64,000 bases of DNA from Macrostomum lignano (GCA_002269645.1 NIVC01000846.1:62001-126000); one strand, 5' to 3'. Shown: positions 19,493-32,635, numbered from the stretch's first letter. Notes: generated by a model from the sequence alone, not told the origin. Made by a program: numbers and translations.

Positions 19493-20890
19493 CAGTAGTT
19501 TTCAACCTGTGGGTTGCAACCCCCAGTGGGGTCATGTGACCATTTTATGGAGGTTGCATCACTAAGAAATGTGAGTATGTCATACTTAATGATAGAGCCC
19601 AACCGGGATCTCGATCCCAACTTGGTTGGGACCCATGTGTTTTTTTAGATTCCCAACCATGTTGGGAGTAAATGTCAGGAGTCAGGAAAAGTCAGGTAGG
19701 ATTATAAAAAGTTTTTACATTTTAAGTATATCTTAAAAATCATTTAGAACCAATTTTGAAAGGACTAACTATGGCAAATATGCCAAATTGATTCATTTAT
19801 TTAGTTTGAGCCTTTGAAAATTATTCTGATTTCCTAGAATATCTTCACTTAAATGAATCAATCAACTTACTCAAACAAAAAGTAATTGAAAAGCACAATT
19901 TTTTGCTAAAAGATAAACACTTTTTAAGATAAAAGATGAATAAGTTATTCAATCATCTATAATTACTGGAAATACTAACAAAATGAAAACTATAAAGTTA
20001 TTGCAAAAAATATGACAATAGTCAAATAGGTTAAGGTTTGAAATTTACCGAGTACCAAATTTTCATTTTACTTGACTGCCCTTTTTATTAGAGGCAGGGG
20101 GTTGTATGCACCCTAGCGCACTTTAAATGACATTGACATTAAGTGACACTCAACTGCGAGAGGCATTATTGCCCATTTTGCTGACTCCCCTGAGCAGGCA
20201 TACAAGTGCATGGATATGTATGCAGGCACAGACTCACATTTTATTTTATCATTAGACATGTACATTTCACTGTGCCTTAGGGGGGAGATTGGCTCTCAAG
20301 GCCATTAATTGCATAAGCAAAGCCAAGCCAAGATTCCAATTCAGCCCCAAATTAATGAGATTGCACTTGGAATTGAGCCTGGGTCACTGGCACACTAAAG
20401 CCTGCACTAGACTGCTGGGCTATGGCCCCCCTACTTGACTGCTCAACAAAACTTGACTTGAATACTCAGCTTGAACTCCCAAAGTTTGGTCAAGTACTCA
20501 GCTGTACCAAAACCTGAGTTTTTCTAGGATCTATGCTCTAGTAGCATTACAAATAGCACTGCACTATAAGTATAAGTTAGGCTAATATAGTAATATCACT
20601 TGACTAATAATACTAATTATTACAATGCCTAGCTATATATTATAATAATAAATGCATCTTTAGCTATCCTATACCTAAATAAGCCTGGATTCCAATGGTA
20701 GATCTTGATCCTGATTCCAACCAATCCCAAGTCCTGACTTGTATGAATTCAATCCTGCCCAAATATATTTTTATATCCTAGTCGGGCTCTATTTAATGAT
20801 GCATTATATTGATTATAAAAAGGGTCACAAACATAAAAAATGTTGCAAGTAAATAAATTTGGGTTGCTTAAAAAAGGTTGATAACCGCTG
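19493..20890. mobile_element. Non-autonomous hAT (Charlie-like) element
   Basis: TIRs CAGTAGTTTTCAACCT / AGGTTGATAACCGCTG (13/16 match); perfect 8-bp TSD GTCTATAA at 19485-19492 and 20891-20898. Confidence 0.88.
19593..20791. mobile_element. Second non-autonomous hAT-like element nested in the Charlie-like element
   Basis: TIRs TAGAGCCCAACCGGGAT / ATCCTAGTCGGGCTCTA (14/17 match); 8-bp TSD CTTAATGA / TTTAATGA (7/8); no transposase ORF. Confidence 0.8.
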
Positions 20891-21420
20891 GTCTATAAAG
20901 TAAAATCTTGTTAATTCACACAATGTTAATTCAAATAGCATAAAACATTTTTTTGAATGTGACAAATGATATATATTATATTGAAAAATTTGAATATTGC
21001 AACAATTGTTACTTTATTAACATATTGTATACCTTCTTGACCATGGAATGGTCATTGCAAAAGTATTTTTTGCCATTATTTACTTCTACTGAAAATTCTT
21101 TTGTCAAAGAGGTTTGAAACCTAAGGCTTAAGCATTATAAAAATAATTAAAGTTATATTGATCATGGATTAAAACAAGTTCTAAAACAATTTTTAATTTA
21201 ATAATAAATTAAAAAGGTATATAAATTGATATAAATAGTGTAGAAAATCTTTGCTGCTGAGTCACTAAACCCATGATAAACAAGTTTGTTTAAAAAAAAT
21301 ACAGATTTTGGGTAGGATTTTGAGAATACAAAATAAAACACATTTACTACAGACAAACAGATATTTGGTCTTCGGAGAATTTTATAGAAAATACATTCAA
21401 AACCGGGTGATACTACTTAC

Positions 21421-21460
21421 CGCCATGTGGTTTAATTCCACGCCTCATATTTACAGACAT
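21421..21460 (-). CDS. INTS1: Integrator complex subunit 1, first coding exon (MSVNMRRGIKPHG-G)
   Basis: Strong donor G|gtaagt at 21420 with phase 1, matching the exon-2 acceptor; spliced CDS is 6240 nt (2079 aa plus stop). The ATG could be 21460 or 21448. Confidence 0.7.
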
Positions 21461-23284
21461 TATATCATTTGGTACACTCAATGCATTGTAAAGCCTGTGA
21501 ACAAATCATTTGTATGTGTGTACAATTAAAAGAAAGTACAAATATAGTTTTACTTCAATGTTGTCATAAAAGTACACAATTTTTATGCAAAGCGACAGGG
21601 AATCACTGAAGACTAAAAAAATTAATTTGGCGCCCAAGAGGAGCGGGCTCAGACACGTATATTTATACTATTTTCATTAAAAGTTAAAACAAATTAAAAT
21701 GTCAGTTAATAAGTAATCTAACCATTATTACTAATTTTACAGTAAATTAGCAACAAGACAACATAACTTAATAATGTATGTTTTCGATACTTTTTCGGCT
21801 ACTTTTTTAACGACTTTTTAAGAACCATGACTTCTTGATTGATCTTGCCATATTGTATTGCTATACACGGACAAGTGTAAGCAACGCGATTGGCAATTGC
21901 CAAATTCTGCAGCTGTTTCGGATATATATTTTTTCTTTTTTACGGAATCCTAGCTTATGTATATTACGGTTCGAAGAGAAGCAACAAGCAATTCATTAAC
22001 AAAGCTCTGTGAAATTCGTGTAGGAATTTCGTACATTTGATGTACTTACACTAAGGACGACTGTAGTATAACAGGGGTTTATAGCATATAAAATATGCAC
22101 TTTTCCCTGTATGAACTAAAAATTTAGACTGCCCATATAGAACCTAGACTACTGATGAGTGTGTATTAATTTTTAAGAATGCCTTTTTGCTGTAGCGCAG
22201 ATATACATGTGTACATGTACATGTATACGGATTACCCATGCAGCTTACCTGTAAGACGAGGAACGTACATGTATGCATGTACATTTTGGACTCCTGGATC
22301 GTCGAGATTAAGATGCTTAAACACGAAATGTAAATACATGAAGCTCCATATATGCACACTTTTGTTCAAGTTAGCCGCTAAGATAAATTATTTACACACT
22401 GCCTTAGCGTAAACTTATTTAGCAATATACCGGATGTGATTTCAGAAAACTTTACTGTGATTGATACATCACATTTAATTGTTCGTAATTTAATGTATAA
22501 AATTGATTAATGAGCTCAGGAAAAAAGAACTAATTAAAAATGAAGCAACAAAAGTGACACGCAGACGATGACTGAGACTATCTTCTAATGCTAATGCTAA
22601 CTTATGGATGCAGGATGCAGTTAAAAAACACGCATAAACAAAGTAAGAGTAAAACTTTGCAGGAGGAAAAATTAAAATACGAGCGTATTGCGATTTAATG
22701 ACTAGTTATGTGTATAAATAACATAGACAATATTTATATATGTATACTTCAAGGCTCCAATTTCAGCTTGATCAATCTCAGTAATAAATGTCAAGGCAAA
22801 AATCTCATAAGATCTGAAGGAAAGGGGAGACTAGAACTCATATATCACTTTACTGCAGCCTCGTTTAAAACTATTTTTGGAACTTCGAAGCTCAGGAGGT
22901 AAAAAATCATTCATTCAAAAAGGAACCACTAAATTATTTGAATAATAATATTTAAAACATTAGGCTTACTGAATACGTATTAATATGCAACTAATAATTT
23001 AAACCATAAAGTTAATCGTAATACTAATAGTAAACCTGAAAAACAGGGATTTTCGATCAGTACATGTATTACAATAGTTTAAGTACTAAATAATACCATA
23101 CATCAACATCAAAGTGGTGAATAGACTTCATTGTACATGCATGCTCTACATGTAGATTTTGGACATGTGACAGCGGTTTGCTAATAATACTAAAATAACA
23201 CCAATAAATTAACCAAGCCTATTGAAATTGCTTTCAACCAAGCTTAAATTATGATAAATTTTAGTTGAACAGTGACAAGTAACC

Positions 23285-23770
23285 TACTGACACAAAACTG
23301 TGCTTATCTACTGACACAAAATTGTGCATATCTACTGACACAAAATTGTGCATATCTACTGACACAGAATTGTGCTTATCTACTGACACAAAATTGTGCA
23401 TATCTACTGACACAGAATTGTGCTTATCTACTGACACAAAATTGTGCATATCTACTGACACAAAATTGTGCATATCTACTGACACAGAATTGTGCTTATC
23501 TACTGACACAAAATTGTGCATATCTACTGACACAGAATTGTGCTTATCTACTGACACAAAACTGTGCTTATCTACTGACACAGAATTGTGCTTATCTACT
23601 GACACATAAATGTGCTTATCTACTGACACAAAACTGTGCTTATCTACTGACACAGAATTGTGCTTATCTACTGACACAGAATTGTGCTTATCTAATGACA
23701 CAGAATTGTGCTTATCTAATGACACAGAATTGTGCTTATCTACTGACACAGAATTTTGCTTATCTACTGA
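23285..23770. repeat. 24-bp minisatellite (TCTACTGACACAAAATTGTGCTTA)
   Basis: About 20 tandem copies just downstream of the P450-like stop codon. Confidence 0.95.
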
Positions 23771-23846
23771 CTGTGTGTTAATTGAACAGACCTTGAAAAT
23801 TGAAGTTCATAGATATCGCACACACAAACTGCAGCACTACAGTTGC

Positions 23847-24215
23847 TCACTCCTCAGGCACCTCCCGCCTAGCCGTATAGGCAAAGCTACCAGGCTGCTT
23901 GCCCGGACTCAGCCGGTACCTGAGCAGCACGCCTTGCACAAGCGCCGATGCCAGGGCCAGAGCGAATCGATAGAACGGCGACTTAGCATGGACGGCCTGC
24001 AACGGCGAGCCGGAGATGCCGCCGCCCTCCGGCTGTTGAGCGAACCTGTCCCAGTGCAGTTCGCCAGCCGACTGGAAGACCAGCGGGTCGCGGTTAACAG
24101 CGTGCAGATTCACCGCCACGCAGGAGCCCATGGGCAGCAGGCAGCCGGCGCACACCAGCTCAGCTGTGCTCAGAAATACCGCCGTATCGCTGCCAATATC
24201 TTCTATGCGGATTAT
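23847..24215 (-). CDS. Cytochrome P450-fold protein (CYP20-like), exon 4; Ser at the expected heme-Cys position
   Basis: Acceptor ctctgcag| at 24216; EE|IIR forms ExxR across the intron; NLHAVNRDP..WDRF matches the meander region; HAKSPFYRFAL sits where xxCxx(L)RFA is expected. Confidence 0.78.
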   Translation of the reverse strand: MIRIEDIGSDTAVFLSTAELVCAGCLLPMGSCVAVNLHAVNRDPLVFQSAGELHWDRFAQQPEGGGISGSPLQAVHAKSPFYRFALALASALVQGVLLRYRLSPGKQPGSFAYTARREVPEE

Positions 24216-24309
24216 CTGCAGAGTTTGCCGCGGTTGCTTTTTAGGGATTAGATTAGTGTCAGTTCTCTCTCAAATCCTTTGTCTGCTCCAACCATGCCTT
24301 AGGATTCTG

Positions 24310-25835
24310 CATTCCCTATCCCTCAGAGGCTTGATTCCCTATCCCTCAGAGGCTTCATTCCCTATCCCTCAGAGGCTTCATTCCCTATCCCTCAGAGGCT
24401 TCATTCCCTATCCCTCAGACTTCATTCCCTATCCCTCAGAGGCTTCATTCCCTATCCCTCAGAGGCTTCATTCCCTATCCCTCAGGCTTCATTCCCTATC
24501 CCTCAGAGGCTTCATTCCCTATCCCTCAGAGGCTTCATTCCCTATCCCTCAGAGGCTTCATTCCCTATCCCTCAGACTTCATTCCCTATCCCTCAGAGGC
24601 TTCATTCCCTATCCCTCAGAGGCTTCATTCCCTATCCCTCAGGCTTCATTCCCTATCCCTCAGAGGCTTCATTCCCTATCCCTCAGAGGCTTCATTCCCT
24701 ATCCCTCAGGCTTCATTCCCTATCCCTCAGGCTTCATTCCCTATCCCTCAGAGGCTTCATTCCCTATCCCTCAGAGGCTTGATTCCCTATCCCTCAGAGC
24801 TTGATTCCCTATCCCTCAGGCTTGATTCCCTATCCCTCAGAGGCTTGATTCCCTATCCCTCAGAGGCTTGATTCCCTATCCCTCAGAGCTTCATTCCCTA
24901 TCCCTCAGAGGCTTCATTCCCTATCCCTCAGGCTTCATTCCCTATCCCTCAGAGGCTTCATTCCCTATCCCTCAGAGGCTTCATTCCCTATCCCTCAGAG
25001 GCTTCATTCCCTATCCCTCAGACTTCATTCCCTATCCCTCAGAGGCTTCATTCCCTATCCCTCAGAGGCTTCATTCCCTATCCCTCAGGCTTCATTCCCT
25101 ATCCCTCAGGCTTCATTCCCTATCCCTCAGAGGCTTCATTCCCTATCCCTCAGAGGCTTCATTCCCTATCCCTCAGACTTCATTCCCTATCCCTCAGAGG
25201 CTTCATTCCCTATCCCTCAGAGGCTTCATTCCCTATCCCTCAGGCTTCATTCCCTATCCCTCAGAGGCTTCATTCCCTATCCCTCAGAGGCTTCATTCCC
25301 TATCCCTCAGGCTTCATTCCCTATCCCTCAGGCTTCATTCCCTATCCCTCAGAGGCTTCATTCCCTATCCCTCAGAGGCTTCATTCCCTATCCCTCAGAG
25401 GCTTCATTCCCTATCCCTCAGGCTTGATTCCCTATCCCTCAGAGGCTTGATTCCCTATCCCTCAGAGCTTGATTCCCTATCCCTCAGGCTTCATTCCCTA
25501 TCCCTCAGAGGCTTGATTCCCTATCCCTCAGGCTTCATTCCCTTTTCCCTATCTCTCAGGCTTCATTCCCTATCCCTCAGGCTTCATTCCCTATCCCTCA
25601 GGCTTCATTCCCTATCCCTCAGAGGCTTCATTCCCTATCCCTCAGAGCTTGATTCCCTATCCCTCAGAGCTTGATTCCCTATCCCTCAGAGGCTTGATTC
25701 TCTATCCCTCAGGCTTCATTCCCTATCCCTCAGCTCAGGCTTCATTCCCTATCCCTCAGAGGCTTGATTCCCTATCCCTCAGAGGCTTGATTCCCTATCC
25801 CTCAGAGCTTCATTCCCTATCCCTCAGAGGCTTCG
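24310..25835. repeat. 21-23-bp minisatellite (TTCATTCCCTATCCCTCAGAGGC) in P450-like intron 3
   Basis: Tens of tandem copies. Confidence 0.95.
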
Positions 25836-25863
25836 TTTATTCATTCCCCCACTCCTCTCAGAC

Positions 25864-26163
25864 CTCTTCCAGTGCAGCCTCAACGCTGTCGTTGTCGGCC
25901 ACGCTGACCGCGGCAAAGAACTGGTCGGGTGCAGCGGCCACCCGAACAAGGCAGGCGTGCACCAGATCGGGCACAATGGCCAGAGACAAGCAGGCAAAGT
26001 CCAGCGCCTCCTGAACCATGTGATTGGCCGTGACAAAATCTGTGTCGGTGATGCCGCACTGATCGAACGACATTTTCTCTTTGATGAAGCGTTCAACGAA
26101 GCTGGGCACGCTGCGATCTACCAGGTTATTGTGCGTGTCGCTCATGAAGTGGTCCAGAAAGTC
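25864..26163 (-). CDS. Cytochrome P450-fold protein, exon 3 (G-J helix region)
   Basis: Acceptor actcag| at 26164, donor GAG|gtctga at 25863, phase 0/0; ends ...VEAALEE just before IIR. Confidence 0.72.
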
Positions 26164-26229
26164 CTGAGTTCGATTGGTTGCAGGGGGTGTCGTATAGATA
26201 TATAGAGAGCTTGTGAATTCAAATACAAG

Positions 26230-27310
26230 GGAAAATAGAAGGGAGAGAAGTATGAAGGGAGAATATGAAGGGAGAGAGGAATGATGGCCTGAAAGGATAG
26301 AGGGATAAAGGGATAGATAAAGGTAGGGATAAAGGGAGGGATGAAGGGAGAGAATTGAAGGGAGGAATGAAGGGAGAGAGGAATGAAGGGAGAGATGAAA
26401 GGAGAGAGGAATGAAGGGAGAGAGGAATGAAGGGAGAGAGGAATGAAGGGAGATAAGAATGAAGGGAGAGAGGAAAGAAGGGAGAGAGGAATGAAGGGAG
26501 AGAGGAATGAAGAGAGAGAGGAATGAAGGGAGATAAGAATGAAGGGAGAGATGAAGGGAGAGAGAAATGAAGGGAGATAAGAATGAAGGGAGAGAGTAAT
26601 GAAGGGAGATAAGAATGAAGGGAGAGAGGAATGAAGGGAGAGAGGAATGAAGGGAGATAAGAATGAAGGGAAAGATGAAGGGAGAGAGGAATGAAGGGAG
26701 AGAGTAATGAAGGGAAAGAGGAATTAAGGGATGGAGGAATGAAGGGAGAGAAGAATGAAGGGAGATAAGAATGAGGGGAGAGATGAAGGGAGAGAAGAAT
26801 GAAGGGAGATAAGAATGAAGGGAGAGAGTAATGAAGGGAGAGAGGAATGAAGGGAGAGAAGAATGAAGGGAGAGAATAATGAAGGGAGAGAGGAATGAAG
26901 GGAGAGAGGAATGAAGGGAGAAAGGAATGAAGGGAGATAGGAATGAAGGGATGGAGGAATGAAGGGAGAGAATAATGAAGGGAGAGAAGAATGAAGGGAG
27001 AGAGTAATGAAGGGAGAGAGGAATGAAGGGAGAGAGGAATGAAGGGAGAAAGGAATGAAGGGAGATAGGAATGAAGGGAGAGAGTAATGAAGGGAGAGAG
27101 GAATGAAGGGAGAGAGGAATGAAGGGAGAAAGGAATGAAGGGAGATAGGAATGAAGGGATGGAGGAATGAAGGGACATGGAAATGAAGGGAGAGAGGAAT
27201 GAAGGGAGAAAGGAATGAAGGGAGATAGGAATGAAGGGATGGAGAAATGAAGGGACATGGAAATGAAGGGAGAAAAAAGAGAAAGGGTGAAAGAAGGGAA
27301 GAGGGAAGAC
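26230..27310. repeat. Purine-rich about 16-bp minisatellite (GAATGAAGGGAGAGAG) in P450-like intron 2
   Basis: Tandem copies read directly. Confidence 0.93.
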
Positions 27311-27386
27311 AGAGAAGAAGAAGCAATAGAAAAAAAGTGGCGCAGTACTCAAAATAGCCCAATGCGAAATCTGACGGAACTCTCAC

Positions 27387-27820
27387 CCGGATCTCGCCGT
27401 GCAGATCCTCCTGCAGTCGGTGCATTCTGTTCCCGTCGCAATTGGGATTGAGCAGGTGAGCGGAGCGGAAGAAGGCCATGTACTTGTCCAAGATGCTGTC
27501 CAACTGCGGCTGCAGGTCATCGCACAGGTCGGAGCCGCCGAACACGGCGTCCAGCAGGTAGGCTCGGACGATGCCGGACACAACCGACTCGTCAATAAAC
27601 GCGCTGGCGTTATCGGCCGAGACTTTGCTGTCTGCATTGTTGCCGTCGCCGTCGCCGTCGCCGCGTAGCCGGTCGCCAAGGCAGGCGAGCGCTTCGTCAA
27701 CGCAGTTGCCAAGCAGAGCGTGCGAGTGCAGCAGATCGTCCACTGCGAATCGCGAAAGCAGGCCGACAACGCGAAGCTCTTCGTAGTTCAAAGAGTATAC
27801 CGTTGTGGCCTTCCAGTCGT
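27387..27820 (-). CDS. Cytochrome P450-fold protein, exon 2
   Basis: Pyrimidine-rich acceptor ccccccag| at 27821 (phase 1), donor CGG|gtgaga at 27386 (phase 0); GC-rich open frame. Confidence 0.72.
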
Positions 27821-27849
27821 CTGGGGGGAGGGGGACGGGAGATAGATAA

Positions 27850-28195
27850 TTATCATCACCACTGTGATGATTATAGCTTATCATCAGCATAATCATCATC
27901 ATAATAATCATAATCATAATCACATTTATCATCATAATTATCTTCATAATCATAATAATCATCATCATCATCATCATCATTAACATAATCATCATATCTA
28001 ATAAATATTATCATCATCATAATCATCATAATCATCCTCAAAATCATCATAATCATAATTACTCGTATTATCATTATCATTATCATTATCAGAATCATCA
28101 TCATCATAATTATCATCATAATCATCATAATCATCATAATTATAATAATCATCATCATCATTATCATAATTATCATCATAATCATAATAATATTC
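27850..28195. repeat. (ATC/ATA)n microsatellite in P450-like intron 1
   Basis: Direct reading. Confidence 0.9.
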
Positions 28196-28272
28196 ACCAG
28201 ATCTTTACAATCGTAAACAACACCAGGCAATTTTTATTACACAAAAGGTTTGGATACTCGCCGATTACTCAC

Positions 28273-28648
28273 CAAAGGCCAGGTGAGGCCTTGCATAAAT
28301 CAGCTTGGAGGTGAATGCAGAGCTATAAACCACATCAGCTTGGCTGACAACAAACAGCCAGTCTCGTCGCTTATTAAATTCAACCAGCACGAATGGCTCG
28401 GTGAACTGGCGCAGGAATTCCCCAAGTAGCAGACTGGTTGGTGTCACCCGACACACTGTTGCCATTGGAAACCTCACATTCTTGCGCGTAATATACCAGG
28501 CAGTAAAGAATAACAAGACCAGAAATAGAGCTAGAATGAAGAGTACTTTAAGCAGAAAATCACTGGACTTGTTGTTTGAGAACACGCCTTCATATTGTGG
28601 CCTGTAGTCCTCACTAGTGAAGGTCTGAGATGGCATACCATTTTCCAT
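28273..28648 (-). CDS. Cytochrome P450-fold protein, exon 1 (N-terminal membrane anchor)
   Basis: ATG at 28648; hydrophobic FLLKVLFILALFLVLLFFTAWYI anchor, then LGEFLRQF..PFVLVEF; donor G|gtgagt at 28272 (phase 1); spliced CDS is 1479 nt (492 aa). Confidence 0.72.
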
Positions 28649-31324
28649 TGTTCAAGTTTTTTAGCTAGAAAGAAAAGGAAGATTGATTGGTTAGGCAATG
28701 ATATTTCACTTTAATTTTTAAATATAAAAAACGACAAAGGTTGTTTAAAACTCTAAAAATCTTTAGCAAATATTTTTAGCAGAATGAATGAAAAAGAAAA
28801 AAGAAAAACAAGTTTAAAAAAAACAAAGTATTTTTTCTTTTTGACACACTAACTTCTAACTATAAAATTGGTTGTTCTAATCTTGACTTATACTAATTGA
28901 TATAAATAATAGTATCAAAATGATTATTACATTCATTTATAAAGGAAAATTTGATTTACAAATAATTCTTGCATAATTTTTATCTTTATAAACAACTAAC
29001 TTTACTACGTCATAAAAGTATAAAAGTCAAAACTTCAACGACAACTATTTGTATTAAGTATTATTTACTTTTATAGTTACTGGATATAAAAAATAAAGTG
29101 CGCAGACAAAAAATGTCTTGATTTCAAATCATGCACTGACAATAACATCTAAATATGAATAAATATGATATATCCATTTATAATAATGAGATCTTCTGAC
29201 TTATTGTTATTGACTAAGCATCTATAATTTGCAAAAGCATGACCTTAGTGCACTATAGTATAAGGTAGCAAGCAGCTTTTCGTATGCTTTCATAATTCTA
29301 TTTCAATGAACTAAAAATTAAACAGAAAAAATTTTATTACAATTGTGACTCAATATGCATGATCGCCATTTTTAAAGACATAAAGTTATACGAAAATATA
29401 AATACATTCAAATTATCGTTAATAATGCAATTTCGCCTAATTTTTTAGTTCTGTCAAGTACACACTAACGTTTAGTCAATATTAACATATTTTTCTGTTG
29501 TATAGAATTAGTTTTTCTCCAAAAACTGTAAGAGTGAGATAAAATATTTTGTTAAGTCTTACAAAACGTTTGAACCGAAAGCCGGTACCCGAAAGTTTCT
29601 TAAATCTACGGAAACAATTTGAAGCATTGCTAATTTAAAATAAATAAATAAAGTACGCACGTAAGATTTTTGACTGGAACACTTCAATAAACAATAAACT
29701 TATTCTGGAGCTACATATGTTGTCTAATGGTTTCGCAAAAAATGTTATTCTTGCTTGATTGTCAATGTTAAATAAACGCACTCGTGAAGTCAATCATAAC
29801 ACACTCGTGGATTAAATAACTCAATAATCATGATACACGATGATACATGTACATATAGCCTTTTTAGTTGGCAACGACATTGATTTTGCATTGTCAATAG
29901 ACATTATACAAGCAAGAGCTTCCAAAAAGAATTAAATTCTATTTACCATTTACATCTATATCAATCAAACAGCCTTACTCTTTAGAAGCAAATGAAAGAA
30001 ACACTTCAATCTGATTTTATAAGTGTGCAGTGGGTCACTTATTTATGCACCACGTACGTACATGTACAAATATGAGGTAAAATTATTTCGGTCTGAAATT
30101 GCGAGAGTACAATATACGGAATAATGAATTTAAATCTGTTAAACAGCCCAACAAAGTAGGAAAGGGACGACCGTTGCACACTAAAAAACGTTTTAATTCT
30201 AGTCCAGAAGTTGCATGGCCGACTAGAACTGGGAGCTTCTCTAACTAAGAGGAGAGGTCGATCAGAGACTTTGAGGAGAGCGAGAAGAATTGGAAGCGAT
30301 ACAGACAACATGCGAGCTTTAAGCCTTGATCTTTCACTGCTTCTTGTTGCCACCTGCCACTGGCTAAGCAGCTTTTTAGGCCCCTAGGTATTAACAGCAG
30401 AGAAGCTCCAGCGAGAGAAGATGAGTCGGGGATTGGGAGTTGGGGATAATTGAAAGCTAAACCACTCAAACGATTGATGACTTTGCTAAAAAGAGGGGCG
30501 AAATGAGATATGGGATATATATGTTAAAGAGAGGCAATAAGGGGGCGGGCGTACAAGACAGTGGATCCCTTAGAGAGCAAAGTGAATTGAGGAGGATAGG
30601 GGAAGTGGGGGGGGCTGCCGACAACTCAGCAACGTGCCGCGAAGCTGACTCAGTTTGGGGAGAGGCAGGAGGAGCAGATGCGATGAAGCTCAACCGGAGA
30701 CTGAGAAAGCAAGGGGTGGGGGGGGAGGAAGACACGCGGACACCTGGCTAGCTGCTGGTTTAGCCTCTACTTAAAACTCTTTGATCTGTAATTTGCTGAA
30801 GTAGCAACAATTCAAGATTAAATGTCTGTCTTACCCATCTATCCCCTTCGCTCCCCTGGCCTACTCGTAATAGGCTGATCTCAGAGAGCTGAGTGCTTTT
30901 AGTCGAATATCATCCAGCTGAGTCCTGAGGGGGGGGGGCATCACTGCGCAGAACTGTTATTTAACGCGAGGCCATATCGGCGCTGGCTTTTTTGCCTGTT
31001 AAAGCTTTCAACTCATCATCATCATCTGCCTAATAGAGACTTAATTCCCAGCTGCGATTGTAGTTTTTAAAAAGGCTTGTCGGATTAGACATTGTGCGAG
31101 ATGCGGGGGCTGCAATATTTTATTATTCCCTAGTGCTGGAGCTCAGGTGCACATCGAATCTCGCCCTTCCCCACGCCCTCGAAGTGACCAATTATTTGTT
31201 TGACCGGCCTCTCAGTTAGTGGCTGCCCCCCCCCCCCTAGTTCATGCTTTTTGTGCCAAAATAGGCCTTCTGGCTGGGCAAGTTATAATTTGCTGAATTT
31301 GAAAGCTGAGTTGCAGATTTTTAG

Positions 31325-32635
31325 ACATAGACAGAACACAGTAGCACTGCAGACACAGAGTAGCACTGCAGACACAGAGTAGCACTGCAGACACAGAGTA
31401 GCACTGCAGACACAGAGTAGCACTGCATGGACACAGAGTAGCACTGCAGACACAGAGTAGCACTGCAGACACAGAGTAGCACTGCAGACACAGAGTAGCA
31501 CTGCAGACACAGAGTAGCACTGCAGACACAGAGTAGCACTGCAGACACAGAGTAGCACTGCAGACACAGAGTAGCACTGCAGACACAGAGTAGCACTGCA
31601 GACGCAGATTAGCACTGCAGACACAGAGTAGCACTGCAGACACAGAGTAGCACTGCAGACACAGAGTAGCACTGCAGACACAGAGTAGCACTGCATGGAC
31701 ACAGAGTAGCACTGCAGACACAGAGTAGCACTGCAGACACAGAGTAGCACTGCAGACACAGAGTAGCACTGCAGACACAGAGTAGCACTGCAGACACAGA
31801 GTAGCACTGCAGACACATAGTAGCACTGCAGACACAGAGTAGCACTGCAGACACAGAGTAGCACTGCAGACGCAGATTAGCACTGCAGACACAGAGTAGC
31901 ACTGCAGACACAGAGTAGCACTGCAGACACAGAGTAGCATTGCAGACACAGAGTAGCACTGCAGACACAGAGTAGCACTGCAGACACAGAGTAGCACTGC
32001 ATGGACACAGAGTAGCACTGCATGGACACAGAGTAGCACTGCATGGACACAGAGTAGCACTGCATGGACACAGAGTAGCACTGCATGGACACAGAGTAGC
32101 ACTGCAGACACAGAGTAGCACTGCATGGACACAGAGTAGCACTGCATGGACACAGAGTAGCACTGCATGGACACAGAGTAGCACTGCAGACACAGAGTAG
32201 CACTGCATGGACACAGAGTAGCACTGCAGACACAGAGTAGCACTGCAGACACAGAGTAGCACTGCAGACACAGAGTAGCACTGCAGACACAGAGTAGCAC
32301 TGCAGACACAGAGTAGCACTGCATGGACACAGAGTAGCACTGCAGACACAGAGTAGCACTGCAGACACAGAGTAGCACTGCATAGACACAGAGTAGCACT
32401 GCAGACACAGAGTAGCACTGCAGACACAGAGTAGCACTGCAGACACAGAGTAGCACTGCAGACACACAGTAGCACTGCAGACACAGAGTAGCACTGCAGA
32501 CACAGAGTAGCACTGCAGACACAGAGTAGCACTGCAGACACAGAGTAGCACTGCATGGACACAGAGTAGCACTGCAGACACAGAGTAGCACTGCATGGAC
32601 ACAGAGTAGCACTGCAGACACAGAGTAGCACTGCT
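31325..32635. repeat. 19/21-bp minisatellite (GCACTGCAGACACAGAGTA)
   Basis: Highly homogeneous tandem copies. Confidence 0.97.

What the first reader, a model, noticed from the sequence alone, without database searches (positions are those of the whole stretch)
23847..28648. Intact P450-fold gene with Ser in place of the heme-ligating Cys and no I-helix AGxxT
Seen: four phase-consistent exons splice into an uninterrupted 492-aa ORF. It has an N-terminal membrane anchor, ExxR (EE|IIR, split by intron 3, so invisible in the ORF track), an NLHAVNRDP..WDRF meander and a C-terminal RFALALASALVQGVLLRYRLSP helix. The axial-ligand position reads HAK-S-PFYRFA. The Ser codon is TCG (23979-23981), two substitutions from TGC/TGT, so a single base-call error cannot explain it. 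Established: P450 catalysis needs the thiolate Cys and usually the I-helix acid/Thr pair; engineered Cys-to-Ser 'P411' enzymes lose monooxygenase activity but gain carbene/nitrene transfer. Inference: the closest pattern I recall is CYP20 (xCPxLRFA). This could be a natural Ser- or His-ligated heme protein, or a non-catalytic P450-fold ligand binder/scaffold kept under selection.
Basis: partly seen in the sequence, partly recalled or inferred. Interest (0 to 1): 0.8.

Follow-up and report, generated by a model that had tools for sequence, protein, structure and literature searches.

The report
Flatworm P450-like gene without heme cysteine
An intact gene of the flatworm Macrostomum lignano, annotated from transcript data, encodes a membrane-anchored and very divergent cytochrome-P450-family protein in which the whole heme-thiolate pocket (not only the cysteine) has been replaced, so it is most likely a non-catalytic P450-derived protein rather than an oxygenase.

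Summary
Four GT-AG exons on the minus strand (28648-23847) splice into a 492-aa ORF. It is identical to GenBank PAA76018.1/PAA76034.1 (Macrostomum lignano, 'hypothetical protein'), whose models derive from RNA-seq transcript assemblies. Pfam p450 is barely passed (23.7 vs 22.8 bits). An exhaustive search of 1.84 billion proteins found one real relative, P0005, from an unidentified eukaryote. P0005 shares the N-terminal motif, the anchor and the P450 core, and it keeps a canonical PFSIGSRKCPA loop.

Against that loop the M. lignano protein reads PLQAVHAKSPF: F→L, G→V, R→A, C→S449 (TCG, 23979-23981) and +2 A→F. A usually basic heme-propionate residue is Phe384. No Cys follows residue 402. No alternative Cys loop is encoded within 12 kb. 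The I helix lacks AGxxT. ExxR and the meander Arg are kept.

Three near-identical genomic copies all carry TCG. They show 6 synonymous and 2 non-synonymous differences and no indels.

Best reading: a P450-fold pseudoenzyme without thiolate heme, probably still under selection. The selection evidence is thin, both AlphaFold runs failed, and no orthologue of known taxon was found. The CYP20 link is not supported. Natural Ser/His-ligated heme is unlikely. Moderately interesting.

The parts
28273..28648 (-). Exon 1 (ATG at 28648; residues 1-125 plus the first base of codon 126). It encodes a 30-residue N-terminal extension carrying the conserved motif Y19-x-G-V-F-S...S28-x-D-F-x-x-K-V, followed by the membrane anchor.
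   Evidence: splice GTGAGT. The motif is shared with P0005.
28490..28558 (-). Single N-terminal transmembrane-type segment, residues 31-53 (FLLKVLFILALFLVLLFFTAWYI).
   Evidence: Hydropathy maximum 2.87 at residue 31. P0005 has the equivalent segment at about residue 40.
27821..28272 (-). Intron 1 (452 nt, phase 1), mostly an ATC/ATG-type trinucleotide array.
   Evidence: array 27880-28185.
27387..27820 (-). Exon 2 (residues 126-270).
   Evidence: AG|ACGACT acceptor, CGG|GTGAGA donor.
26164..27386 (-). Intron 2 (1223 nt, phase 0), filled by a 16-bp minisatellite.
   Evidence: array 26362-27273, 58 copies.
25864..26163 (-). Exon 3 (residues 271-370). It holds the I-helix region and ends with E370, the first residue of ExxR.
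25975..25989 (-). I-helix position equivalent to (A/G)Gx(E/D)T. It reads L329-S330-L331-A332-I333, so there is no acid/alcohol pair.
   Evidence: Profile alignment to AGHET of PDB 8z9s.
24216..25863 (-). Intron 3 (1648 nt, phase 0), filled by a 23-bp minisatellite. It splits ExxR.
   Evidence: array 24310-25834, 68 copies. Intron length differs among the copies: 1648, 1452 and 890 nt.
23847..24215 (-). Exon 4 (residues 371-492 plus TGA). In one uninterrupted exon it holds the rest of ExxR, the beta-sheet region, the meander, the degenerate Cys pocket and the L helix.
24042..24053 (-). Meander W425-D-R427-F428 (PERF equivalent). R427 completes the E370/R373/R427 triad.
   Evidence: aligned to PERF-type motifs of CYP1A1/1A2.
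23973..24002 (-). Degenerate heme-binding loop, residues 442-451 (L-Q-A-V-H-A-K-S-P-F), aligned with F-S-I-G-S-R-K-C-P-A of the relative P0005.
   Evidence: Weak support from the 7x2q alignment.
23979..23981 (-). Ser449 codon TCG at the axial-ligand position. It is the same in all three genomic copies.
   Evidence: and (codon 449 is not among the variable codons).
24174..24176 (-). Phe384 codon, at the beta1-4 position where most P450s have a heme-propionate-binding His or Arg. CYP1A1 has His there and P0005 has Arg.
   Evidence: Column 22 of alignment A3 and its alignment to CYP1A1 4i8v. The role of that residue is from established P450 structural knowledge.

Best explanation
This is a real, intact gene of Macrostomum lignano whose model derives from transcript data. 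It descends from a cytochrome P450, anchored in a membrane (by analogy the ER) by one N-terminal helix.

The structural core signatures of the P450 fold are kept: the K-helix ExxR, the meander Arg, the beta-sheet region and the L helix. The heme-thiolate pocket has been dismantled in this lineage (F→L442, G→V445, R→A447, C→S449, small→F451, beta1-4 basic→F384), and there is no I-helix acid/alcohol pair.

The most likely mechanism is that the protein no longer binds heme through a thiolate, probably binds no heme at all, and cannot activate O2. On this reading it survives as a P450-fold pseudoenzyme: a membrane-bound binding, scaffolding or regulatory protein, plausibly acting on a lipophilic ligand or on partner proteins.

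Shown: the gene structure, P450 homology, loss of every signature residue, retention of those residues in the only relative found, and the same state in three genomic copies.

Inferred: absence of heme, continued selection, and the non-catalytic role. Its actual partner or ligand is unknown.
For: The gene model equals a GenBank protein. Those GenBank models come from genome-guided RNA-seq transcript assemblies (PMC5730564).

P450 homology: Pfam passes above its cutoff, and 96 PDB P450 sequences match at E<=0.01 with the two-sequence profile.

The only non-trivial relative among 1.84 billion representatives is P0005 (E 3.3e-13). It aligns over the full length, including the N-terminal motif and the anchor, and has a canonical PFSIGSRKCPA loop (Pfam 49.9 bits including the Cys loop). 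The canonical loop is therefore ancestral and was lost here.

There is no Cys after residue 402, and no [FWY]xxGx[RHK]xCx[GAP] pattern in any frame on either strand of window 20001-32000. The pocket lies in the same exon as the meander and the L helix.

Five signature positions are changed, and the Ser codon is two steps from TGY. The loss is therefore not recent, yet 492 codons and six splice sites remain intact.

Three genomic copies have 8 variable codons, 6 synonymous and 2 non-synonymous (binomial P = 0.003 against site proportions, 0.025 if only transitions are considered). Their CDS has no indels, against 10-17 indel events in 2.8 kb of upstream non-coding sequence.

Precedent: heme-free, Cys-less P450 homologues with non-catalytic roles exist, namely EryCII, DesVIII and AknT (PMC3391682; PMC10054333).
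Against: The selection evidence is thin. The three copies differ by less than 1%, only 8 sites vary, and the L002-L003 pair alone gives dN/dS of about 0.6.

Some indels in the non-coding flank may be long-read assembly errors in low-complexity sequence.

M. lignano is a neopolyploid with heavy gene redundancy, which favours relaxed selection.

No orthologue from a known related species was found, so conservation of the Ser state cannot be shown.

Transcription is inferred from the provenance of the annotation, not from reads I inspected, and reads cannot be assigned among near-identical copies.

The P450 fold could not be confirmed in 3D (pLDDT 35.6 and 37.0). Absence of heme is an inference from sequence only.
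Confidence: 0.55

Rival explanations
1. It is a decaying relic. A redundant P450 paralogue lost its function and now drifts neutrally. It is still transcribed and by chance still open in all copies of a neopolyploid genome, making it a unitary pseudogene in the making.
For: All catalytic signatures are gone. The only relative keeps Cys. The protein barely passes Pfam and has almost no detectable relatives. The genome is highly redundant. The L002-L003 comparison has 2 non-synonymous against 1 synonymous difference.
Against: A 492-codon ORF and all six canonical splice sites are intact in three copies. There are 6 synonymous against 2 non-synonymous changes and no CDS indels, against 10-17 indel events in 2.8 kb of flank. 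The pocket has accumulated at least five replacements plus a synonymous step in the Ser codon. That implies a long time since the loss, during which a neutral ORF would be expected to break. The structural ExxR/Arg triad and the N-terminal motif are still conserved with a relative that is only 26% identical.
Confidence: 0.28
2. It is a natural heme protein with a non-thiolate axial ligand (Ser449-O, or His446 or another His). That would make it a natural counterpart of the engineered Cys-to-Ser 'P411' enzymes, with chemistry other than monooxygenation.
For: Ser sits at the aligned axial position, with His446 three residues upstream. The fold-stabilising ERR triad, which is also linked to heme incorporation in P450s (established knowledge), is retained.
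Against: Engineered P411s keep the rest of the pocket. Here the Phe, Gly and Arg of FxxGxRxC and the small residue at +2 are all replaced, and the beta1-4 basic residue is Phe. The usual heme-propionate and packing contacts are therefore missing. The I helix has no oxygen-activation or comparable polar residues at the aligned site. No structural model is available to show a plausible ligand geometry.
Confidence: 0.07
3. It is an assembly or annotation artefact, and the true transcript encodes a normal Cys loop through a base error, frameshift or alternative exon.
For: All three copies come from one long-read assembly. The older-assembly protein fragments (P0003, P0004) stop at exon 3, so they do not independently cover exon 4.
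Against: TCG is identical on three separately assembled contigs, and TCG differs from TGY at two positions. The other two frames of exon 4 are full of stops and carry no Cys-loop pattern. Nothing matching the pattern lies within 12 kb on either strand. The introns are tandem repeats with no room for a coding exon. The meander, pocket and L helix are contiguous in one exon.
Confidence: 0.02

Closest known systems
Cytochrome P450 superfamily (Pfam PF00067), eukaryotic membrane-anchored type
   Same: It has a single N-terminal anchor, the K-helix ExxR, the beta-sheet/NRDP region, a PERF-like meander (WDRF), the L helix and a similar overall length. It is detected by Pfam and by profile matches to about 96 solved P450s.
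   Different: It has no Cys ligand, no FxxGxRxCxG loop, no I-helix AGxxT and no Pro-rich hinge after the anchor. It carries a 30-residue conserved N-terminal extension. Identity to the nearest relative is only 26-31%, and it has no relative among named CYP families at E<=0.001. By the usual 40% identity rule it would be a family of its own.
P0005, an unnamed 508-aa P450 from ENA assembly ERZ25070786 (contig ctg124097l, unidentified eukaryote)
   Same: It is the only real homologue found. It shares the N-terminal YxGVFS...SxDFxxKV motif, the anchor, WLFVV, the I-helix region without Thr, ExxR, the meander WxRF, and K-(C/S)-P at the ligand position.
   Different: It keeps the canonical PFSIGSRKCPA loop and an Arg at the beta1-4 position. 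It is intronless. It has a 27-residue insertion between the meander and the Cys loop. Its taxon is unknown, so orthology versus paralogy is undecided.
EryCII / DesVIII / AknT: Cys-less, heme-free P450 homologues that activate glycosyltransferases in actinomycete antibiotic pathways
   Same: [quoted passage not shown] They are the best functional analogy.
   Different: They are soluble bacterial proteins encoded next to their glycosyltransferase partner. Here the protein is from an animal, has introns and a membrane anchor, and its downstream neighbour is INTS1. EryCII is not among the listed PDB matches, so there is no specific relationship.
CYP20A1 (vertebrate orphan P450)
   Same: It also lacks the I-helix AGx(D,E)T motif and has an atypical heme-binding signature (PMC4964396). 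It is an orphan with no known substrate.
   Different: CYP20A1 retains the Cys. No CYP20-type protein appeared in the exhaustive search at E<=0.001. The resemblance in the 'CPxLRFA / SPFYRFA' string is not backed by overall similarity.
Engineered P411 enzymes (axial Cys-to-Ser variants of P450 BM3)
   Same: Ser is at the aligned axial-ligand position.
   Different: P411s keep the rest of the heme pocket and bind heme. Here the pocket is replaced wholesale. This comparison rests on general knowledge of P411s and was not tested here.

Membership tests
Cytochrome P450 superfamily (PF00067) | Significant match to the family HMM | tested here: met
   PF00067 gives 23.7 bits against a cutoff of 22.8, E 2.4e-5, over residues 219-431. 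This is marginal. It is strengthened by the two-sequence profile, which matches 96 PDB P450 sequences at E<=0.01, best 1.6e-6.
Cytochrome P450 superfamily (PF00067) | K-helix ExxR plus the meander Arg (ERR triad) | tested here: met
   E370, R373 and R427 are present, invariant with P0005, and aligned to solved P450s.
Cytochrome P450 superfamily (PF00067) | FxxGxRxCxG loop with the heme-ligating Cys | tested here: not met
   The loop reads L442-Q-A-V-H-A-K-S449-P-F451. There is no Cys after residue 402, and no such loop in any frame within 12 kb.
Cytochrome P450 superfamily (PF00067) | I-helix (A/G)Gx(E/D)T oxygen-activation motif. This is usual but not universal. | tested here: not met
   The aligned position reads L-S-L-A-I (329-333) against AGHET of 8z9s.
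Cytochrome P450 superfamily (PF00067) | P450 three-dimensional fold | tested here: inconclusive
   Two AlphaFold2 runs on three-sequence alignments gave mean pLDDT 35.6 and 37.0. Only the order of secondary-structure elements is compatible. No fold search was attempted on such models.
Cytochrome P450 superfamily (PF00067) | Heme binding with a 450-nm CO-difference spectrum | not testable with these tools
   This needs expressed protein.
CYP20 family | Sequence affinity to CYP20A1 (at least about 40% identity, or at least best-hit status) | tested here: not met
   Only P0005 and one bacterial-type CYP reach E<=0.001 among 1.84 billion representatives. hhalign against a remembered human CYP20A1 sequence gave probability 8.3% over 37 columns (that sequence is unverified).
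CYP20 family | Axial Cys retained within the atypical heme loop | tested here: not met
   Ser449 is at that position. That CYP20A1 keeps its Cys is from the literature and memory.
Cys-less P450-homologue auxiliary proteins (EryCII/DesVIII/AknT) | P450 homology with loss of the axial Cys | tested here: met
   The family definition is from PMC3391682.
Cys-less P450-homologue auxiliary proteins (EryCII/DesVIII/AknT) | Specific sequence relationship to EryCII-type proteins | tested here: not met
   EryCII (its structure is in the PDB, per PMC3391682) is not among the listed PDB matches of the protein or of the profile. Only the best 60 rows were visible in each.
Cys-less P450-homologue auxiliary proteins (EryCII/DesVIII/AknT) | Encoded beside, and acting on, a glycosyltransferase partner in a biosynthetic cluster | tested here: not met
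   This is a eukaryotic locus. The downstream gene is an INTS1 homologue and the upstream 10 kb is tandem repeats with no called gene.
P411-type Ser-ligated heme enzymes | Ser at the axial position with an otherwise intact heme pocket | tested here: not met
   Ser is present, but the F, G and R of the loop, the +2 residue and the beta1-4 basic residue are all replaced.

The most novel reading that the evidence does not exclude
The protein still binds heme, using Ser449-O or His446 as the proximal ligand. It would then be a naturally evolved, membrane-bound 'P411-like' hemoprotein in an animal, with non-monooxygenase chemistry or a sensing role.
Probability: 0.05. Interest if true: 0.85.

Novelty: new variant of a known kind. 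Interest (0 to 1): 0.45.

Why it matters
P450s are defined by their cysteine-thiolate heme. Documented members of the fold that have dispensed with it and taken a non-catalytic job are few, and the ones I found documented here are bacterial (EryCII/DesVIII type).

An animal P450 descendant that is membrane-anchored, apparently expressed and has its heme pocket fully replaced would extend the 'pseudoenzyme' concept to metazoan P450s. It would give a tractable case: M. lignano has transgenesis (PMC5730564) and, to my knowledge, RNAi. It could be used to ask what a heme-less P450 scaffold does in a membrane.

It is also a practical caution for CYPome counts in flatworms. This gene passes the Pfam threshold and would be counted as a P450, although it almost certainly is not an oxygenase.

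If it turns out to be a drifting relic, it is only an annotation footnote.

Tried and rejected
1. Word-indexed homology searches with the protein, with a two-sequence profile and with P0005 each returned only the query's own cluster. One search was a parameter error.

2. A scan of JGI metagenome contigs matched 547 patterns, none confirmed by tblastn.

3. Two AlphaFold2 predictions failed. The full-length protein with P0001 and P0005, and the anchor-less protein with P0005 and P0006, gave pLDDT 35.6 and 37.0. They are unusable, so no fold search was run and the question of which residue faces the heme stays open.

4. CYP20 affinity was rejected.

5. I tried to identify the organism behind P0005 through cluster look-ups of its own and neighbouring proteins. 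All are singletons without names.

6. An alternative exon or frame supplying a Cys loop was rejected.

7. A literature search for the three gene identifiers found no paper.

8. A raw blastn of the three loci against each other was swamped by tandem repeats. It was replaced by targeted alignments of non-repeat segments.

9. An Rfam scan of the window found nothing.

Full report
**What is in the sequence**

On the minus strand of the window, four exons (28273-28648, 27387-27820, 25864-26163, 23847-24215) with canonical GT...AG borders join into a 1479-nt reading frame of 492 codons plus TGA. Intron phases are 1, 0 and 0.

The product is identical to a GenBank protein of the free-living flatworm Macrostomum lignano, PAA76018.1/PAA76034.1, 'hypothetical protein BOX15_Mlig014502g1 / Mlig006003g1'. 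The window is identical to contig NIVC01000846.1 of assembly GCA_002269645.1.

The GenBank gene models of that assembly were derived from a genome-guided RNA-seq transcriptome (StringTie/TACO/TBONE; PMC5730564). I did not see reads myself.

All three introns are almost entirely tandem arrays.

- One N-terminal hydrophobic segment, residues 31-53.
- ExxR as E370|I-I-R373, split by intron 3.
- NLHAVNRDP at 406-414 and WDRF at 425-428.
- An L-helix-like RFALALASALVQGVLLRY from residue 453.
- HAK-S-PF, with the Ser449 codon TCG at 23979-23981.

**Is it a P450?**

The homology is weak but real. Pfam PF00067 is passed by a hair: 23.7 bits against a cutoff of 22.8, E 2.4e-5, residues 219-431. That match stops short of the Cys loop. 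phmmer against PDB sequences finds only P450s, with a best E of 0.0017.

An exhaustive HMMER scan of 1.84 billion representative proteins found just two other proteins at E<=0.001.
- P0006 is an ordinary bacterial-type P450 (E 5.6e-5).
- P0005 is a 508-aa protein encoded by an intronless ORF on a 15-kb eukaryotic-looking contig of ENA assembly ERZ25070786 (E 3.3e-13).

P0005 aligns with the M. lignano protein over its whole length at 26% identity. The alignment includes an unusual conserved stretch before the membrane anchor (Y-x-G-V-F-S-x3-S-x-D-F-x2-K-V), the anchor itself, WLFVV, ExxR and W-x-R-F. P0005 is an unambiguous P450 (Pfam 49.9 bits, E 2.8e-13, profile positions 327-453, including the heme loop).

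A profile of the two proteins matches 96 distinct PDB P450 sequences at E<=0.01, from the I helix to the meander, with a best E of 1.6e-6.

Two AlphaFold2 runs gave mean pLDDT of 35.6 and 37.0. Only three sequences were admissible for the alignments. The fold and the residue facing the heme site could therefore not be checked in 3D.

**The heme site**

P0005 has a canonical P-F-S-I-G-S-R-K-C-P-A loop. The M. lignano protein aligns to it as P-L-Q-A-V-H-A-K-S-P-F.

The signature FxxGxRxCx(G/A) has therefore become LxxVxAxSxF. The Phe, Gly, Arg and Cys are all replaced, and the small residue at +2 is now Phe.

A weak profile alignment also puts this column on the Cys of GRRVCPG in sugiol synthase 7x2q. 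That match is not significant on its own.

At the beta1-4 position CYP1A1 has His and P0005 has Arg. From established P450 structures this residue usually binds a heme propionate. M. lignano has Phe384 there.

The I-helix AGHET of PDB 8z9s aligns with L-S-L-A-I at residues 329-333. P0005 (LLGGQPL) also lacks the Thr, so that feature is older than the loss of Cys.

No Cys follows residue 402. No [FWY]xxGx[RHK]xCx[GAP] pattern exists in any of the six frames of window 20001-32000. The other frames of exon 4 are full of stops. Because the meander, pocket and L helix lie in one exon, an alternative exon cannot restore a Cys loop.

**Is it an error?**

The assembly holds three copies on separate contigs (NIVC01000846, 848, 847). 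All have the same exon structure and splice sites and TCG at codon 449. TCG is two changes from TGY. An artefact is very unlikely.

**Is it under selection?**

The copies are under 1% diverged, so power is low.
- Eight codons vary, 6 synonymously and 2 non-synonymously (D184G, G479D).
- With 353 synonymous and 1123 non-synonymous sites, that split has binomial P = 0.003. It is 0.025 if one allows that all changes are transitions.
- Pairwise dN/dS is 0, 0.10 and 0.63.
- The CDS has no indels. The 2.8 kb upstream has 10-17 indel events per pair of copies and about 0.4-0.5% substitutions; the pooled non-repeat non-coding segments give 0.6-0.8%.
- Intron lengths differ through repeat copy number.

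A second, inferential argument concerns time. At least five near-invariant pocket residues, plus a synonymous step in the Ser codon, have changed since the canonical ancestor. Yet 492 codons and six splice sites are intact, and the fold-stabilising E-R-R triad is conserved with a relative that is 26% identical.

This favours continuing constraint on the protein as a whole, with constraint lifted on the heme site. It does not prove it. M. lignano is a neopolyploid with much redundancy, which is the setting in which relics linger.

**Most likely mechanism**

I commit to a P450-derived pseudoenzyme. It would be a membrane-anchored P450-fold protein that no longer ligates heme through a thiolate, probably holds no heme, and cannot activate oxygen. 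On this reading it is retained for a binding, scaffolding or regulatory role (confidence 0.55).

Heme-free, Cys-less P450 homologues with such roles are documented in actinomycetes: EryCII, DesVIII and AknT (PMC3391682; PMC10054333). That is an analogy of mechanism, not membership. There is no specific sequence relationship, no partner glycosyltransferase gene, and a different architecture.

The rivals are:
- a drifting relic (0.28);
- a heme protein with Ser or His ligation (0.07), disfavoured because the heme-holding residues went along with the Cys;
- an artefact (0.02).

**CYP20**

The literature confirms that CYP20A1 lacks AGx(D,E)T and has an atypical heme signature (PMC4964396). It keeps its Cys.

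No CYP20-like protein came up in the exhaustive search. That sequence is unverified, so this is a lead only. I do not file the gene under CYP20.

With 26-31% identity to its nearest relative, and no other relative at E<=0.001 apart from a bacterial-type CYP, the Mlig/P0005 pair would form its own family.

**Limits**

The taxon of P0005 is unknown. I cannot say whether it is an orthologue from a related flatworm or a distant paralogue, nor when the Cys was lost. No other Macrostomum sequences were reachable. No paper mentions the gene.

**Verdict**

I class it as a new variant of a known kind (Cys-less P450 homologues), of moderate interest.

Noticed in passing
window 24310-25834, 26362-27273, 27880-28185: Each of the three introns is almost wholly one tandem array: a 23-bp unit x68, a 16-bp unit x58, and an ATC-type trinucleotide x~100. 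Intron lengths differ between the three genomic copies through repeat copy number (for example intron 3 is 1648, 1452 and 890 nt), while the exons stay collinear.
   Followed up: partly
window 23284-23771: A 24-bp tandem array (20 copies, 93% matches) starts about 75 nt downstream of the stop codon, in the 3' UTR or the intergenic spacer before the next gene.
   Followed up: no
window about 21460 downward to below 13847 (minus strand); L001:17189-24802: The next gene downstream on the same strand is a 2079-aa Integrator complex subunit 1 (INTS1) homologue. The same neighbour follows the second copy (L002).
   Followed up: no
window 1-64000: At least 25 large minisatellite arrays (units of 11-45 bp, each 0.3-2 kb) are spread over the window, including the 10 kb upstream of the gene, where no gene was called. 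This is in line with the 15% tandem/simple-repeat content reported for this genome (PMC5730564).
   Followed up: no
P0003 / P0004 (UniProt A0A1I8I0X7, A0A1I8JAY6): Two truncated models of this same gene from the older assembly read through the exon-3 donor (they end ...ALEEV). They carry the unrelated names 'Vacuolar protein sorting-associated protein 8 / 51 homolog', which look like annotation errors. P0003 also skips 14 residues (DDWKATTVYSLNYE) at the start of exon 2, as if an alternative in-frame acceptor had been used.
   Followed up: no
window 28559-28648 (residues 1-30); P0005 residues 10-39: The stretch before the membrane anchor, which is normally unconserved in P450s, carries a motif shared by the two proteins despite 26% overall identity: Y-x-G-V-F-S-x3-S-x-D-F-x2-K-V. 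This suggests a family-specific function for the N-terminal tail.
   Followed up: partly
L004:190-1716: The only relative (P0005) is encoded by a single uninterrupted ORF, whereas the M. lignano gene has three introns. It has a 27-residue acidic/polar insertion between the meander and the Cys loop. Its contig also carries a transposase-like HTH_38 ORF and exon-like fragments of a nucleotide-sugar transporter. The source organism is unidentified.
   Followed up: partly
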